64,000 bases of DNA, taken from sequence record NC_031120.1; one strand, given 5' to 3'. The translations under genes were made by a program, and so were the position numbers. Shown piece by piece: positions 4,584-61,078 of this stretch (within the stretch, counting starts at the first letter, position 1; every line of letters begins with the position of its first letter). Under the pieces are notes generated by a model. The model did no database searches and was not told where the DNA came from. It saw only the letters and a program-made list of their open reading frames with translations.

Positions 4584-4603
4584 GATAGATATTATCTTAG
4601 TGA
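4582..4603 (+). promoter_or_regulatory. Putative early (virion RNAP) promoter
   Basis: GAGAT-AGATATTATCTTAGTGA; 5 near-identical intergenic copies in the window. Confidence 0.7.
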
Positions 4604-13320: not shown

Positions 13321-13342
13321 CAGACAGATATTATCTTCATGA
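13321..13342 (+). promoter_or_regulatory. Putative early promoter
   Basis: CAGAC-AGATATTATCTTCATGA. Confidence 0.7.
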
Positions 13343-44705: not shown

Positions 44706-44727
44706 CAGACAGATATTATCTAGGTGA
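44706..44727 (+). promoter_or_regulatory. Putative early promoter
   Basis: CAGAC-AGATATTATCTAGGTGA. Confidence 0.7.
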
Positions 44728-57270: not shown

Positions 57271-57311
57271 TAGGTACCTACCCGTCGCGGGGTAGGTACC
57301 TAATCTTTTTT
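57271..57311. terminator. Bidirectional intrinsic terminator
   Basis: Perfect 13-bp stem TAGGTACCTACCC/GGGTAGGTACCTA between convergent genes. Confidence 0.85.
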
Positions 57312-58684
57312 TAGCTGGCAATGCCACGAATCAAGAAGTACAGCAGCAGCGCATTACGCACAGCCGCCAGTGCCGCATTGTTCGTCAGGTGCGTTTCTTT
57401 CTTCACCAGTTTCTCAATCCGTTCACGCAACGACAGTACGTATTCGTTGGAGGACTTCGAGGATTGATACAAGGCCCGCATGCGGTTTAGGAGGAAGGCC
57501 ACGTCTTTGAAGTTGATGCGGTTGGTCACAATCAAATCAAAGGCATGGGCTAAAGCGTCCTCCATAATGGACTCCATGTCCTTGCGGGTTTTGCCAAGCG
57601 GTTGACTGGCGATATAGACCAGCACCGTTTTCATGGCCACCGGTGAGGCTTTTGGCACCATCTCCAAACACACCCGGGCCAACTCTTCTTTGTAGAAGTT
57701 GTTGATGTCCCAGGACGCATCCAGCAGAGTTTGCTTGGCGGTGTTCAGTGCCGTGACCTTATCACGAATGATGGTCTCACCGTCGAGGTCGACTTTCGAG
57801 GACTGGTTCACCACACGCGCGTTATCCCGACGTACCCGGTCCAAGACGGCGTAGTAATCTTTTACCGTTTGTTTGGTACGGGTGTTAAGGTCGGTGATAA
57901 AACGAATCAGCAGGTCTGGAGTGTTGAACGCTTTCACCTCGTTGTAGTGCGGGCACTCTTTTGAGACGAAGTATTCGGCACGTTCGGTCAGGTGCTGGCC
58001 CCAGTTGCCCATGCGTCGGATGTCAAACTTCAACGACAGCATCGAGTACGCCGCATCCGCAGCATTCATGTCCACCGGCTTCGGGAAGAAGTGGTAGTAG
58101 ATACTGGAATAGAATTTGAACTGGAGCAGCTTGACCAGATCCACACAGGCCGCGTAGATATCCTTGTCGGCAAACTTCGGGATCATCCGGTGCACCATGT
58201 AGGTGATGGCCAGGTTGAAAGTGTTACCCGCGACAGCCCATTCGCCGTTGATGGTTTTGGTCTGGTCGATGTTGGCCTGCAATAAATCTTCGTCGACTTC
58301 AAGCACCTGGTCAAACAGCTTGTTCCGATCGCTGTCAAAGAAGCGAATGCTGTGAACCCCCAACAGGTTCGACCCGAACCATTCGACATTCCCCTCCCGG
58401 TTGAACACCCCTTCCACGTACGCGCGGATACTGGTGGCCAGTCGGCGGTCGAAGGTGACTTTCTTAAACGCGTCGTCAAAGGCTTTGCGTAGCGCGTCGG
58501 TTTTCATGGCTTCCGATGCGACTAATTGCTTAGTGGGCAGGTACCCACCGAATCCGTAATCGTAATACAACCCGTCTTCGGATTCGTCTTCATCATCGAA
58601 GAAACCCCGGCGGGCTTCCTGGGCGACCACGCCGTTCGGAACCGTATACATGCCTTTCACGAAATCATAAATTAATTCTGACAT
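57311..58684 (-). CDS. Head/virion protein with acidic N-terminal propeptide (phiKZ gp32-like)
   Basis: 457 aa; AQE and ASE sites flank an acidic stretch in the first ~60 aa. Confidence 0.7.
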   Translation of the reverse strand: MSELIYDFVKGMYTVPNGVVAQEARRGFFDDEDESEDGLYYDYGFGGYLPTKQLVASEAMKTDALRKAFDDAFKKVTFDRRLATSIRAYVEGVFNREGNVEWFGSNLLGVHSIRFFDSDRNKLFDQVLEVDEDLLQANIDQTKTINGEWAVAGNTFNLAITYMVHRMIPKFADKDIYAACVDLVKLLQFKFYSSIYYHFFPKPVDMNAADAAYSMLSLKFDIRRMGNWGQHLTERAEYFVSKECPHYNEVKAFNTPDLLIRFITDLNTRTKQTVKDYYAVLDRVRRDNARVVNQSSKVDLDGETIIRDKVTALNTAKQTLLDASWDINNFYKEELARVCLEMVPKASPVAMKTVLVYIASQPLGKTRKDMESIMEDALAHAFDLIVTNRINFKDVAFLLNRMRALYQSSKSSNEYVLSLRERIEKLVKKETHLTNNAALAAVRNALLLYFLIRGIAS

Positions 58685-58703: not shown

Positions 58704-58725
58704 CGGATAGATATTATCCTTGTGA
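58704..58725 (+). promoter_or_regulatory. Putative early promoter
   Basis: CGGAT-AGATATTATCCTTGTGA. Confidence 0.7.
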
Positions 58726-58749
58726 CTATACCATAAGGAATTTTAAGCC

Positions 58750-59877
58750 ATGAATAATCTACAACGCAAAGCTGTATGGCGTAAGCGCTATATGACCCCC
58801 GGATACGACCGCAAAAAGTCGGTGACCATGTGGGTACTGCCGCACGGTTGCATGTGTACTCTGCAACGCGTCGGTGGACAACCTATCCTGGATAATGGAA
58901 CTTACTCAGCGGCTAACTCGCTGCTGGCAAGTCTGTTAAATGACGCAGGGATAACCGGTTCAGTGATTGTCTACTCAACCGAAGTCATCCCGCAGAATAC
59001 TTCACGTTGGCTCACCTGGTGGATGTCCACCAACCCAACGTTAGAAGACCCACTTTTACGGACCATCACGGTAACGTCTTTCGGGCAGGTTCCAACGAAG
59101 AAACTGCCGTTCCACGTTAACGTAATTGAGCCGTTAAACTTACGGGCTGAGGAAGTGCTGGAGACGATCCGCACCCAGTCCCGTAATCCCGCGGTCTCTA
59201 TCTTCATTCTTGAAGATGAGGGCGTGAAGTACCGAATGGAACCAGAGCGTCGGATGGAAGCCAAGGTGATCGATTGCACAAAATACGGGTACGTGCTACG
59301 TACTCCATCGAATCACGTCTTCCTGTCGTCAATGGTCTCCCGTCGTGTACAGGGACAGTTAGCCCAACATGGCTTGCGTCCCCAAGACCTTATCGGTGCT
59401 ACCGTAAAGGTCGAGTACACCATGTTTACGGACGGTAATCGTTTGTGCAATTACAAGTCCCCCATTGTGTACCGCTGCGTGTCACTCGACAACATGAGTG
59501 ACGGAGTCATCCCCCCATACCATGGCCCCTATCTGTTTACCCCAAACACACCGGAGGAGAAGGCGCTGCTGACCGCCACTCGGTGCAGTCGTGCGGAGAT
59601 AAACGTTAGTGATGAGGTCATCGTGGGGCGTGATGATGAGACCGACTTAAACCTGTTCACCTTCCGAAGAGGTGCGGAAGAAGGGTTGTATGCTGCAACC
59701 CTGGTGCGGGGAGATAAGTCGGAAGAATGGCGTTTCGATTCTGATTTTGCGATAGATGCACTCGACCCCGAGGCATTCATCCGTTGTGTAGACAGTAACC
59801 TGTTTTACGCCACGGGGTACAACGTCGTGAAAATCGGTCTCCGTTACGTCGATCATACACAGTCGCCGATAACATAG
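58750..59877 (+). CDS. Degenerate ATP-dependent DNA-ligase-like protein (NTase + OB fold, catalytic motifs lost)
   Basis: Motif order and spacing match minimal viral ligases, but KxDG reads LPHG, DGE reads TGS, EG reads SI; OB part RMEAKVID...LIGATVKVEY...SPIV retained. Confidence 0.55.
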   Translation: MNNLQRKAVWRKRYMTPGYDRKKSVTMWVLPHGCMCTLQRVGGQPILDNGTYSAANSLLASLLNDAGITGSVIVYSTEVIPQNTSRWLTWWMSTNPTLEDPLLRTITVTSFGQVPTKKLPFHVNVIEPLNLRAEEVLETIRTQSRNPAVSIFILEDEGVKYRMEPERRMEAKVIDCTKYGYVLRTPSNHVFLSSMVSRRVQGQLAQHGLRPQDLIGATVKVEYTMFTDGNRLCNYKSPIVYRCVSLDNMSDGVIPPYHGPYLFTPNTPEEKALLTATRCSRAEINVSDEVIVGRDDETDLNLFTFRRGAEEGLYAATLVRGDKSEEWRFDSDFAIDALDPEAFIRCVDSNLFYATGYNVVKIGLRYVDHTQSPIT

Positions 59878-59886
59878 GAGTGCGTT

Positions 59887-60399
59887 ATGTTCACTGCACC
59901 TACCATCAGTTCTGTTCAGGACCTGCGCGTAGTCTGCCAGGACAATCGTCTCGCTCAGCTATGCGACGAAGCAATCATCACCCAGATGATTAGCTATAAC
60001 CCGAATGGGAACTACAGTAACACGATCGAAATACTGACCGTGGCCGCTGTCCTGAAACGCTTAAAAGGCCAGCTGACGATTCAGCAGCTTTGTGTGTTCC
60101 TGGACAACCACCGCGCGTTAGCCAAAGGGATGTTGGCGCTAGTGCAGGATGGAGTCGCTGCTTTCGATAACGGTATTGGTAATTTCATGGATATTGCATC
60201 CGGGTTCGAGAATGGCAAGTTCTTCGTTAGCAAAGAGCGGTATGATGGAGTGTGGGATTACCTGGGGCGTTGTGGCGTTGCCATCCCCCAGACTATCCGT
60301 AACTTCCAGCTCTACGACGTGAACGTCTTTGGTGAGCCGGGTCTCTGGATTGAACCAGTGACTCTGTCCATCGTGGACAGCAATGTAATTCGTAGTTAA
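59887..60399 (+). CDS. Hypothetical protein
   Basis: AGGAG RBS, 170 aa. Confidence 0.8.
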   Translation: MFTAPTISSVQDLRVVCQDNRLAQLCDEAIITQMISYNPNGNYSNTIEILTVAAVLKRLKGQLTIQQLCVFLDNHRALAKGMLALVQDGVAAFDNGIGNFMDIASGFENGKFFVSKERYDGVWDYLGRCGVAIPQTIRNFQLYDVNVFGEPGLWIEPVTLSIVDSNVIRS

Positions 60400-60405
60400 G
60401 CCCAC

Positions 60406-60440
60406 CCCGTACTGCTTCGGCAGTACGGGTTTATTTTATT
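60406..60440 (+). terminator. Intrinsic terminator
   Basis: CCCGTACTGC-TTCG-GCAGTACGGG plus T-tract. Confidence 0.9.
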
Positions 60441-60461
60441 TCTTACCATTGAGGATTAATC

Positions 60462-61001
60462 ATGCAATACAAACTTGTTGGCATTAACGATATCATTAAC
60501 GGCCCATACTCCCACTGCCCGGAATACCATAACCTGCGTATTGGCTACGCCTCTACCGCTGAATCGATAGCCCAATATCGAACCACGACATTCCTCGTCG
60601 CATCTGACAAGGGACTGCCTTTTGATTTCCAGCCCCTTATTCCCAACAATACCCCTAACGGTAAATGGCTCTATGTGTACCTCAAGGAGCCGTTCAGTGT
60701 GGCGCTACGCGATGAGCTACGCGCCTTGCTCCATACCGGTACCCTGGTCGAGAAAGACGCCGTATGGGCGGTGGTAGAAGCCCACAACGTTGCCGTCGAT
60801 CTTCGTGCCGAGATGGTCACGCTCAGTCTGCCGCCACAGGCCAAAGATCATCCGGAGTACGAAACCATCTTCAAAGACCTCACCGATGGCGAAGAGCTGG
60901 GTGATCGTGAGCCGGTTATGTTTGTACAGTACACGGAAGAATACATGCGCGAGTTCTTGCCGCGTGGTTGTAAGATTATTGACTTCATGTACGCGCTCTA
61001 A
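60462..61001 (+). CDS. Hypothetical protein, paralogue family with 61352 and 62067
   Basis: GAGGA RBS; LYVYLKEPFSVALRDELRALLHTG block shared with 62067. Confidence 0.8.
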   Translation: MQYKLVGINDIINGPYSHCPEYHNLRIGYASTAESIAQYRTTTFLVASDKGLPFDFQPLIPNNTPNGKWLYVYLKEPFSVALRDELRALLHTGTLVEKDAVWAVVEAHNVAVDLRAEMVTLSLPPQAKDHPEYETIFKDLTDGEELGDREPVMFVQYTEEYMREFLPRGCKIIDFMYAL

Positions 61002-61056: not shown

Positions 61057-61078
61057 CAGATATATATTACCTAGGTGA
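61057..61078 (+). promoter_or_regulatory. Putative early promoter
   Basis: CAGAT-ATATATTACCTAGGTGA, containing the exact phiKZ early core TATATTAC. Confidence 0.75.

What the first reader, a model, noticed from the sequence alone, without database searches (positions are those of the whole stretch)
58750..59877. Early gene encoding an ATP-dependent DNA-ligase-like fold with all catalytic motifs erased
Seen: compared with minimal viral ligases (PBCV-1 type, from recall) the blocks fall in order: SVTMWVLPHGCMC (motif I KxDGxR), NSLLASLL..AGITGSVIV (motif III DGE), NTSRWLT, VIEPLNL..EEVLE...SIFILE..GVKY (motif IV), RMEPERRMEAKVID (motif V/OB start), LIGATVKVEY...SPIV (motif VI). The adenylated Lys and the acidic residues are gone. 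It follows an early-type promoter and has an extra ~130-aa C-terminal region. Inference: a nick/DNA-end-binding pseudoligase that could protect injected DNA ends, block host repair or defence nucleases, or bind ATP/NAD.
Basis: inference. Interest (0 to 1): 0.65.

Follow-up and report, generated by a model that had tools for sequence, protein, structure and literature searches.

The report
Dead DNA-ligase fold in jumbo phage
An early gene of the Erwinia jumbo phage Caitlin encodes a well-conserved protein that has the shape of a DNA ligase but lacks the residues that ligases need to join DNA, so it most likely binds DNA or partner proteins; its role is untested.

Summary
ORF 58750-59877 (+, 375 aa) of Erwinia phage vB_EamM_Caitlin gives a confident model: nucleotidyltransferase (NTase) domain at residues 1-165 and OB domain at 166-248. 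It matches ATP-dependent DNA ligases (T4, PBCV-1, Lig E, ASFV; Z 9-11, Foldseek E about 1e-6). No sequence method recognises it.

The motif I lysine, the motif IV acid-Gly and both motif V lysines are replaced. Across 43 relatives the only invariant residue is one glycine.

Shorter relatives (about 250 aa) in Vibrio phage pVa-21 and uncultured jumbo phages keep more ligase character: K in motif I in 15 of 29, D-G in motif IV in 27 of 29. This looks like stepwise decay from a true ligase.

The extra C-terminal domain (249-375) is acidic and matches no known fold. It is homologous to a separate gene lying directly downstream of the short forms, so it is a fused partner.

The gene is under strong purifying selection (dN/dS 0.07). 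It sits behind a repeated promoter motif that also precedes the nuclear-shell gene chmA. The ten carrier genomes tested have no detectable canonical DNA-ligase domain.

Best reading: a non-catalytic, ligase-derived DNA-binding or scaffold protein. The closest precedent is the inactive ligase domain of poxvirus A20. Its function is untested.

The parts
58707..58718 (+). Core of a repeated promoter-like motif (ATAGATATTATC, preceded by an A/T-rich stretch and followed by nnnGTGA), 31 nt before the start codon
   Evidence: Nine matches to the 10-mer core in the window against 1.6 expected, reached by 0 of 100 shuffles. About 25 good copies genome-wide, all on the + strand, mostly 30-70 nt before an RBS and ORF. 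The same motif precedes the ChmA orthologue and an RNA polymerase beta gene. It also precedes the orthologues in SPN3US and in two uncultured jumbo phages.
58735..58739 (+). Ribosome-binding site (AAGGA), 10 nt before the ATG
   Evidence: Read directly from the sequence.
58750..59877 (+). Pseudoligase ORF, 375 aa; orthologue of SPN3US_0263
   Evidence: dN/dS 0.074 against the ChrisDB orthologue. Single copy in the genome.
58750..59244 (+). Ligase-type nucleotidyltransferase (adenylation-like) domain, residues 1-165
   Evidence: Structural matches over model 1-165 to the S. aureus LigA adenylation domain (Z 8.3, rmsd 4.0 over 156 residues) and to other ligase NTase domains.
58831..58857 (+). 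Motif I remnant, residues 28-36 (W-V-L-P-H-G-C-M-C): Leu where ligases have the AMP-accepting Lys, His where they have Asp
   Evidence: Beta-hairpin turn in the model, offsets in the structural alignments and column statistics. Position 30 is L/Y/N/Q in the long forms and K in 15 of 29 short forms. G33 is the only invariant residue.
59194..59217 (+). Motif IV remnant, residues 149-156 (V-S-I-F-I-L-E-D)
   Evidence: hhalign pairs it with T7 E-G-L-I-V-K. Positions 150-151 are D-G in 27 of 29 short forms and S-(L/I) in the long forms.
59230..59253 (+). Motif V remnant and domain linker, residues 161-168 (Y-R-M-E-P-E-R-R)
   Evidence: hhalign pairs it with T7 W-K-M-K-P-E-N-E. Both Lys positions are replaced (162 variable, 164 Glu). 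P165 and R167 are nearly invariant.
59245..59493 (+). OB-fold domain, residues 166-248; basic, and the most constrained part
   Evidence: OB-only matches over 166-250: IF1 (Z 6.5, rmsd 2.4), eIF1A and the PAN N-domain. pI 9-10 in most relatives. dN/dS 0.035.
59416..59463 (+). Motif VI-like end of the OB domain, residues 223-238 (Y-T-M-F-T-D-G-N-R-L-C-N-Y-K-S-P)
   Evidence: hhalign pairs it with the T7 Y-M-E-E-T-P-D-G-S-L-R segment. Y223 and G229 are nearly invariant. R231 is invariant in the long forms and present in 19 of 29 short forms.
59494..59874 (+). Extra C-terminal alpha/beta domain, residues 249-375; acidic, no known fold; a fused copy of a separate gene in other phages
   Evidence: Domain model pLDDT 73.9. 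Best PDB match Z 3.6 and no Foldseek hit. pI 4.5-5. hhalign to the 123-134-aa genes directly downstream of the short forms: probability 94%, E 1e-7 over 97 columns. A 134-aa BFVD entry matches at E 3.9e-5.
57311..58684 (-). Divergently transcribed neighbour, 457 aa, phrog_2921; orthologue of phiKZ gp32 (annotated 'structural head protein'). Conserved synteny partner, probably not functionally linked
59887..61001 (+). Two co-oriented downstream ORFs (170 aa, phrog_9731; 179 aa, phrog_33722) that lie before the next promoter copy at 61060, so probably in the same early transcription unit
   Evidence: Co-transcription is inferred and was not tested.

Best explanation
The gene encodes a catalytically dead descendant of an ATP-dependent DNA ligase, a 'pseudoligase'. 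It keeps the two-domain NTase + OB architecture that real ligases clamp around a DNA nick. The lysine that accepts AMP and the acidic and basic residues that hold the nucleotide and metal are replaced, so it cannot run the ligase reaction.

What selection preserves is the scaffold, a basic OB domain, and an [R/K]-W-L-T helix motif. Also preserved is an acidic ~125-residue partner domain, fused here and encoded as a separate adjacent gene in relatives.

I infer that the protein is made early and then acts without catalysis. The OB side would bind DNA, most plausibly nicks, gaps or ends. The acidic partner domain would regulate that binding or recruit another protein. The closest analogy is the inactive ligase domain of poxvirus A20, which is a structural part of the viral replication machinery.

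Shown: the fold, the loss of the motifs, the conservation, the fusion, and the promoter type. Inferred: early timing, DNA binding, and a scaffold or adaptor role.
For: - Fold: Z 9-11 and Foldseek E 1e-6 to 1e-5 to many DNA ligases over residues 1-247. BFVD gives the same picture and also hits a poxvirus processivity factor at E 4.8e-5.
- Motif loss: column statistics over 43 relatives. G33 is the only invariant residue. Nearly invariant residues are mainly Gly, Pro, Trp and Tyr, plus R167.
- No member matches any Pfam ligase model.
- Colinear remnants of motifs IV, V and VI against T7-type ligases.
- Graded decay: short forms keep K30 in 15 of 29 and D-G in 27 of 29.
- Purifying selection: omega 0.074 overall and 0.035 in the OB domain.
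- The OB domain is basic in most relatives and the C-terminal domain is always acidic.
- Fusion or fission with the downstream gene.
- Promoter motif shared with chmA and an RNAP beta gene, and conserved before orthologues. [quoted passage not shown]
- Precedent: the A20 middle domain is described as 'an inactive DNA ligase' (PMC11142717).
Against: - No binding, localisation or expression data exist for this protein or for SPN3US gp263.
- The NTase domain is neutral to acidic in most relatives, so the full ligase-type DNA clamp may not be kept.
- I had no model coordinates. The motif I and motif III mapping rests on secondary structure and alignment ranges, not on a residue-level superposition.
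- A weak alternative hhalign alignment places the T7 motif I region elsewhere.
- The carrier genomes have no detectable canonical ligase domain, which leaves open that this protein still contributes to ligation in some way.
Confidence: 0.55

Rival explanations
1. It is an adaptor that stands in for a missing phage ligase. It recognises nicks or Okazaki junctions in phage DNA and recruits or escorts the host NAD+-dependent ligase (LigA) or another repair factor into the phage nucleus. The acidic partner domain would be the docking surface.
For: All nine carrier genomes tested for the LigA adenylation domain lack it: Caitlin, SPN3US, pVa-21, phiEaH2, Wellington, Phobos, CR5 and one uncultured genome, plus ChrisDB-type relatives by homology. 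The ATP-ligase domain is also absent wherever it was tested. PhiPA3 and Goslar carry LigA and lack this family. Iyer et al. proposed host-ligase recruitment by a stand-alone ligase DNA-binding domain in other jumbo phages (PMC7824862).
Against: phiKZ, RAY and PCH45 lack both LigA and this family, so the complementarity is partial. The sample is small.
Confidence: 0.15
2. It is an early host-takeover or anti-defence protein that no longer touches DNA. The remodelled NTase pocket would bind a nucleotide or signalling molecule, acting as a sponge. Alternatively the protein binds and blocks a host enzyme.
For: Early-type promoter. The lineage-restricted family diverges faster than its neighbour between Caitlin and pVa-21: 19% against 43% identity. 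The NTase domain is neutral to acidic. Ligase and capping folds have been reused as pure nucleotide binders: the snurportin cap-binding domain matches at Z 6.3.
Against: The most constrained part is the basic OB domain, not the pocket. No pocket residue is conserved across the family. No match in NCBIfam. The defence library PADLOC was not searched.
Confidence: 0.17
3. It is still a working polynucleotide ligase or nucleotidyltransferase that uses a non-canonical nucleophile, for example His32 or Lys7, which are invariant within the SPN3US-like clade.
For: H32, K7, E164, R167, R231 and K236 are invariant among the 22 close homologues. No other ligase domain is detectable in the genome. Two GenBank records label the homologue 'putative DNA ligase'.
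Against: None of these residues except R167 is kept in the wider family. H32 becomes T/S/V/K, K236 becomes S/T, E164 becomes L/V. Both motif V lysines and the acid-Gly of motif IV are missing. No conserved Lys lies in the segment that aligns with motif I.
Confidence: 0.07
4. It is a virion or assembly protein, given its position next to the terminase and a head-protein gene.
For: It lies between the terminase large subunit and a cluster of unknown genes, next to a phiKZ gp32-type head protein gene.
Against: It is transcribed divergently from the head gene, from the promoter type shared with chmA. It is not mentioned among SPN3US virion or essential proteins in the papers searched.
Confidence: 0.03

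Closest known systems
Minimal ATP-dependent DNA ligases (PBCV-1 ligase, Lig E, T7 and T4 ligases)
   Same: Two-domain NTase + OB architecture in the same order (Z 9-11). Colinear remnants of motifs IV, V and VI. Size of the NTase-OB part (248 aa) is close to Lig E and PBCV-1.
   Different: No motif I lysine, no motif IV acid-Gly, no motif V lysines. No match to any Pfam ligase model. Carries an additional acidic C-terminal domain of unknown fold.
Middle domain of the poxvirus DNA-polymerase processivity factor A20 (VACV) / A22 (MPXV)
   Same: A viral protein with an inactive DNA-ligase fold (catalytic subdomain plus OB) used as a structural part, not as an enzyme (PMC11142717). It is found by the structure searches: 8wpf_B at Z 5.8, 8q3r_A, and BFVD Q6TV90 at E 4.8e-5.
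   Different: No sequence relationship. A20 has flanking domains that bind the D4 glycosylase and the E9 polymerase, which are absent here. Caitlin has a different partner domain. No evidence that the phage protein is part of a polymerase holoenzyme.
Snurportin-1 m3G-cap-binding domain
   Same: An NTase fold of the ligase and capping-enzyme superfamily that has lost catalysis and only binds a nucleotide ligand (1xk5, Z 6.3 over model residues 1-166).
   Different: It has no OB domain. It resembles capping enzymes more than ligases. It is eukaryotic and its similarity to the model is much weaker.
Short-form relatives (pVa21_191 of Vibrio phage pVa-21 and about 30 clusters from uncultured jumbo phages)
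   Same: True homologues: profile E 1e-29 to 1e-5, and 19% identity to pVa21_191. Same fold: BFVD entry A0A1S6L218 at E 2.6e-16. Same synteny and the same promoter type.
   Different: 240-272 aa, without the C-terminal domain, which is a separate downstream gene. They keep more ligase-like residues.

Membership tests
ATP-dependent DNA ligases (covalent nucleotidyltransferase superfamily) | NTase domain followed by an OB domain | tested here: met
   AF2 model at pLDDT 87.9. T4 ligase Z 11.0 (232 residues aligned), PBCV-1 Z 10.4, Foldseek E 1.6e-6.
ATP-dependent DNA ligases (covalent nucleotidyltransferase superfamily) | Motif I KxDGxR with the AMP-accepting lysine | tested here: not met
   The corresponding turn reads L-P-H-G-C-M. 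Position 30 is L/Y/N/Q in the long forms. There is no conserved Lys between residues 16 and 36. The mapping comes from the model's hairpin and from alignment offsets, not from a residue-level superposition.
ATP-dependent DNA ligases (covalent nucleotidyltransferase superfamily) | Motif III (D-G-E) and IIIa acidic and aromatic nucleotide contacts | tested here: inconclusive
   No conserved acidic residue on strand 70-76 or just after it. The exact register could not be fixed without coordinates.
ATP-dependent DNA ligases (covalent nucleotidyltransferase superfamily) | Motif IV (E/D-G-hydrophobic-K) | tested here: not met
   Caitlin reads V-S-I-F-I-L. The short relatives keep D-G in 27 of 29.
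ATP-dependent DNA ligases (covalent nucleotidyltransferase superfamily) | Motif V (K-x-K) | tested here: not met
   R162-M-E164 aligns with T7 K-M-K. Position 162 is variable and position 164 is Glu (long forms) or Leu/Val (short forms).
ATP-dependent DNA ligases (covalent nucleotidyltransferase superfamily) | Motif VI basic residues at the end of the OB domain | tested here: inconclusive
   R231 aligns with the Arg of T7 G-S-L-R and is invariant in the long forms. The alignment is statistically weak.
ATP-dependent DNA ligases (covalent nucleotidyltransferase superfamily) | Recognition by the family's sequence models (PF01068, PF01653, PF09414) | tested here: not met
   No hit for the protein, for any of the 43 relatives, or anywhere in the genome.
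ATP-dependent DNA ligases (covalent nucleotidyltransferase superfamily) | Self-adenylylation and nick sealing | not testable with these tools
   Needs biochemistry.
Viral inactive-ligase scaffolds (poxvirus A20/A22 type) | Ligase NTase + OB fold without catalytic residues | tested here: met
   PMC11142717.
Viral inactive-ligase scaffolds (poxvirus A20/A22 type) | Stable subunit of the viral DNA polymerase holoenzyme | not testable with these tools
No interaction data exist.
PHROG 8136 (unknown function) | Full-length match to the profile | tested here: met
   E 7.3e-190, residues 1-374 against profile positions 1-375 of 377.

The most novel reading that the evidence does not exclude
The pseudoligase and its acidic partner domain form a two-part early module in a lineage of nucleus-forming jumbo phages that has no detectable ligase gene of its own. 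The module marks nicks in phage DNA and brings in the host NAD+-ligase, or shields the nicks from host nick- or end-sensing defences. That would be a dead enzyme kept as a substrate-recognition adaptor for the live host enzyme.
Probability: 0.15. Interest if true: 0.75.

Novelty: new variant of a known kind. Interest (0 to 1): 0.52.

Why it matters
Nucleus-forming jumbo phages replicate their DNA inside a protein shell that keeps most host proteins out. Even so, this lineage (SPN3US, Caitlin and relatives, pVa-21) has no detectable DNA ligase domain. How its lagging-strand fragments are joined is an open question.

The only ligase-shaped protein these phages encode is this conserved, probably early-expressed gene, and it lacks the catalytic residues. 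Finding out what it binds could show how these phages obtain or replace ligase activity. It would also add a second, independent viral case, after poxvirus A20, of a ligase fold reused as a non-enzymatic part.

The result also corrects 'putative DNA ligase' labels in at least two GenBank records. It gives a fold to a PHROG family of unknown function and links a separate small gene family to it through a fusion.

Tried and rejected
- Sequence routes gave nothing. Pfam, NCBIfam, and PDB searches by phmmer and by profile found no ligase. hhalign of the close family against T7 ligase alone found nothing.
- hhalign of the wide family against 77 T7-type ligases gave only weak, though colinear, local alignments. 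Global mode found nothing. A competing weak alignment (family 51-90 to T7 11-55) was rejected because the structural alignments cover the model from residue 1.
- C-terminal domain: no convincing fold match (best Z 3.6). The ESM Atlas gave no usable hit.
- The genes at the same slot in phiKZ (gp33) and PhiPA3 (gp18) are not detectably related. The family profile finds nothing in phiKZ, PhiPA3, RAY, Goslar or PCH45, with positive controls working.
- Literature: no mention of SPN3US gp263 in the papers searched. No supplements are held for the jumbo-phage survey.
- Sequencing runs: the holders are kept as contigs and none is an infection time course.
- Complex prediction was tried on the short form plus its downstream partner but was not available.
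- Earlier notes of the scan held nothing about this gene.
- No model coordinates were available, so conserved residues could not be mapped in 3D.
Full report
**What and where.** The window is the last 64 kb of Erwinia phage vB_EamM_Caitlin (KX397365 / NC_031120; 100% identity; window = genome 177148-241147). This is a 241-kb jumbo phage of the SPN3US-like group. The flagged ORF is real: 58750-59877, + strand, 375 aa. It matches PHROG 8136 (unknown function) end to end at E 7e-190. It matches nothing in Pfam, NCBIfam or the PDB by sequence. Full-length homologues at 43-92% identity occur in about 60 phage records, from Erwinia, Salmonella, Cronobacter, Proteus and Escherichia jumbo phages including SPN3US (locus SPN3US_0263). 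Two records call it 'putative DNA ligase' and the rest 'hypothetical protein'.

**The fold.** An AlphaFold2 model built on 22 homologues is confident (mean pLDDT 87.9, pTM 0.72).
- Foldseek against the PDB returns 35 hits at E<=1e-3. Those listed are DNA ligases, led by PBCV-1 ligase (2q2t, E 1.6e-6), Lig E, T7, T4 and ASFV ligases.
- A search that does not depend on Foldseek gives T4 ligase Z 11.0 (232 residues aligned), Pmar-Lig Z 10.6, PBCV-1 Z 10.4, a Lig E-type ligase Z 9.2 and ASFV Z 9.0.
- Chains that hold only an adenylation domain match model residues 1-165. Chains that hold only an OB fold (IF1, eIF1A, PAN) match 166-250.
- Predicted viral structures give the same picture.

**Are the catalytic motifs gone?**

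Motif I. In the model a beta-hairpin (strands 24-31 and 34-41) has its turn at P31-H32-G33. This is the geometry of ligase motif I, where the Lys ends the first strand, Asp-Gly makes the turn and Arg starts the second strand.
- Ten ligase structures align from model residue 1. In each, the known catalytic lysine lies 21-33 residues after the first aligned residue. The lysine numbers (for example PBCV-1 K27, T7 K34, T4 K159, LIG1 K568) come from the literature, not from a tool.
- This places the catalytic position at the end of strand 24-31.
- There the protein reads L30-P-H-G-C-M. Among close homologues position 30 is L/I/H/N/Y/Q, and no lysine between residues 16 and 36 is conserved.

Motifs IV to VI. 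hhalign of the family against 77 T7-type ligases gives a weak alignment (E 0.0036, probability 9%) that is exactly colinear.
- Family 149-154 (V-S-I-F-I-L) pairs with T7 E-G-L-I-V-K (motif IV).
- Y-R-M-E-P-E-R-R pairs with W-K-M-K-P-E-N-E (motif V).
- Y-T-M-F-T-D-G-N-R-L pairs with Y-M-E-E-T-P-D-G-S-L-R (start of motif VI).
- So both motif V lysines are replaced (R/variable and E), and the motif IV acid-Gly is S-I. Only the motif VI-like arginine (R231) survives.

Caveat. I had no model coordinates. The motif I and III register is inferred from secondary structure and alignment ranges. A second weak hhalign alignment proposes another register for the N-terminal part. Under either register no conserved Lys or acidic residue is available.

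**Wider family.** A profile search of 1.8 billion representative proteins found 45 relatives in two tiers.
- Long forms (360-416 aa) have the C-terminal domain.
- Short forms (240-272 aa) stop after the OB domain.
- The short forms come from Vibrio phage pVa-21 (pVa21_191) and from uncultured contigs of 200-255 kb.

Short forms retain more ligase-like residues than long forms. Position 30 is Lys in 15 of 29, motif IV is [F/Y]-D-G-[L/I] in 27 of 29, and a few keep one motif V Lys. No charged residue except R167 is kept across all 43 sequences. The single invariant residue is G33. The nearly invariant ones are G67, G70, W87, P165, R167, G216, Y223 and G229. That pattern points to a conserved scaffold, not a conserved active site, and fits stepwise decay from a real ligase. 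No member matches a Pfam ligase model.

**The extra domain.** Residues 249-375 form a small sheet-plus-helix domain (pLDDT 73.9) with no convincing match to solved structures (best Z 3.6, no Foldseek hit). It is acidic in every long form (pI 4.5-5; one member is pI 6.3), while the OB domain is basic in most relatives (pI 9-10).
- In pVa-21 and in two uncultured phages, the short-form gene is followed after 10-18 bases by a 123-134-aa gene.
- A profile of those small proteins aligns with the Caitlin-type C-terminal domain at 94% probability, E 1e-7, over 97 of about 125 columns.
- A 134-aa BFVD entry matches that part of the model (E 3.9e-5, rmsd 2.3). By length and accession series it is most likely pVa21_192.

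The long form is therefore a fusion of two neighbouring genes, or the short arrangement is a fission. Either way the two parts very probably work together. A complex prediction to test this was not available.

**Is it a working gene?** Yes. Against the ChrisDB orthologue dN/dS is 0.074 at unsaturated dS of 0.71. By domain it is OB 0.035, NTase 0.061 and C-terminal 0.11. It is single-copy.

**Promoter and timing.** The motif ATAGATATTATC lies 31 nt before the start codon, preceded by an A/T-rich stretch and followed by nnnGTGA.
- It is strongly over-represented: nine matches to the 10-mer core in the window against 1.6 expected, reached by 0 of 100 shuffles.
- About 25 good copies occur genome-wide, all on the + strand, mostly 30-70 nt before an RBS and ORF.
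- One copy precedes a 602-aa protein that is 50% identical to SPN3US YP_009153316, listed as the SPN3US ChmA nuclear-shell protein (PMC10643120). Another precedes an RNA polymerase beta-subunit gene.
[quoted passage not shown] Early virion-RNAP promoters of phiKZ-like phages are described as extended, A/T-rich, highly conserved motifs with a start site about 6 nt downstream (PMC5312081).
- The same motif type lies upstream of the orthologues in SPN3US and in two uncultured phages.

So 'early-type promoter' is supported by association. Timing itself is not measured. No infection transcriptome for this group was found.

**Context.** The divergent neighbour (57311-58684, - strand) is the orthologue of phiKZ gp32 and PhiPA3 gp17, annotated 'structural head protein'. 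It is present in all five other nucleus-forming phages tested. The arrangement of terminase, head-protein gene and pseudoligase is kept in pVa-21 and in the uncultured phages. The pseudoligase family itself is absent from phiKZ, PhiPA3, RAY, Goslar and PCH45, with working positive controls. The genes at the same slot in phiKZ and PhiPA3 are not detectably related. The neighbour is 43% identical between Caitlin and pVa-21, against 19% for the pseudoligase.

**Ligase complement.**
- No LigA-type (PF01653) match in Caitlin, SPN3US, pVa-21, phiEaH2, Wellington, Phobos, CR5 or one uncultured relative.
- No ATP-type (PF01068) match wherever tested.
- No RNA-ligase (PF09414) match in Caitlin.
- PhiPA3 and Goslar, which lack the pseudoligase, each carry a LigA.
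- phiKZ, RAY and PCH45 have neither.

The two are never found together in this small sample, but the complementarity is incomplete.

**Interpretation.**
- Firm: a ligase-derived, conserved protein behind an early-type promoter that lacks the canonical chemistry, plus a partner domain.
- Most likely mechanism (inferred): non-catalytic binding of DNA, most plausibly nicks, gaps or ends, through the basic and highly constrained OB side. The acidic partner domain would regulate this binding or recruit another protein. In role this resembles the inactive ligase domain of poxvirus A20 in the viral polymerase holoenzyme (PMC11142717).
- Rivals: a recruiter of the host ligase (0.15), a nucleotide- or host-protein-binding takeover factor (0.17), a ligase with an odd nucleophile (0.07), and a virion protein (0.03).

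**Novelty.** Catalytically dead ligase folds are known (A20/A22, and the snurportin cap-binding domain). This phage family, its graded short and long forms and its fused partner domain appear undescribed. It has no Pfam or NCBIfam model and no mention in the papers searched. I rate it a new variant of a known kind, of moderate interest. Interest would be higher if the link to the missing ligase proves real.

Noticed in passing
window 4585-4596, 13324-13335, 44709-44720, 58707-58718, 61060-61071 (and about 20 more in the rest of the genome): A promoter-like motif (A/T-rich stretch, then ttcag-ATAGATATTATC-tnGGTGA) occurs about 25 times, only on the + strand. It precedes the ChmA orthologue, an RNA polymerase beta gene and many small unknown genes. 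It would define the probable early regulon of this phage.
   Followed up: partly
P0025 / P0026 (Salmonella phages SPFM1 and SPFM7, 'hypothetical protein') and P0067: These database proteins consist of 20-residue blocks of the SPN3US-type pseudoligase in reverse block order. That is what results if the 60-base lines of a sequence file are written in reverse order. It is probably an artefact in those genome records, not biology.
   Followed up: partly
phiKZ (NC_004629), Erwinia phage RAY (KU886224), Serratia phage PCH45 (MN334766): These nucleus-forming phages show no match to the NAD-ligase adenylation domain or to the pseudoligase family. phiKZ also has no ATP-ligase match. PhiPA3 and Goslar do carry LigA. 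DNA ligase is evidently not a core gene of this phage family.
   Followed up: partly
window 57311-58684 (- strand): The 457-aa neighbour (phrog_2921, labelled unknown) is the orthologue of phiKZ gp32, annotated 'structural head protein'. It is conserved at 25-31% identity in phiKZ, PhiPA3, RAY, Goslar and PCH45, and at 43% in pVa-21.
   Followed up: partly
Phage records SEGD1 (KU726251), Stratton (KX397373), Asesino (KX397364): The orthologue lies under two annotated CDSs in each record, and in SEGD1 the match is in two pieces. This suggests frameshifts or sequencing errors in those records.
   Followed up: no
P0068 (4982 aa, from the profile search): A giant protein has seven short stretches that match the E-x-W-R-F-x-S-D-F region of the C-terminal domain (E 1.9e-5). 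This may be a repeat of similar composition or a distant relative of that domain.
   Followed up: no
window 59887-60399 and 60462-61001 (+ strand): Two conserved unknown proteins (phrog_9731 and phrog_33722) follow the pseudoligase with no promoter copy between them. They are probably co-transcribed with it. They have no Pfam or NCBIfam match.
   Followed up: no
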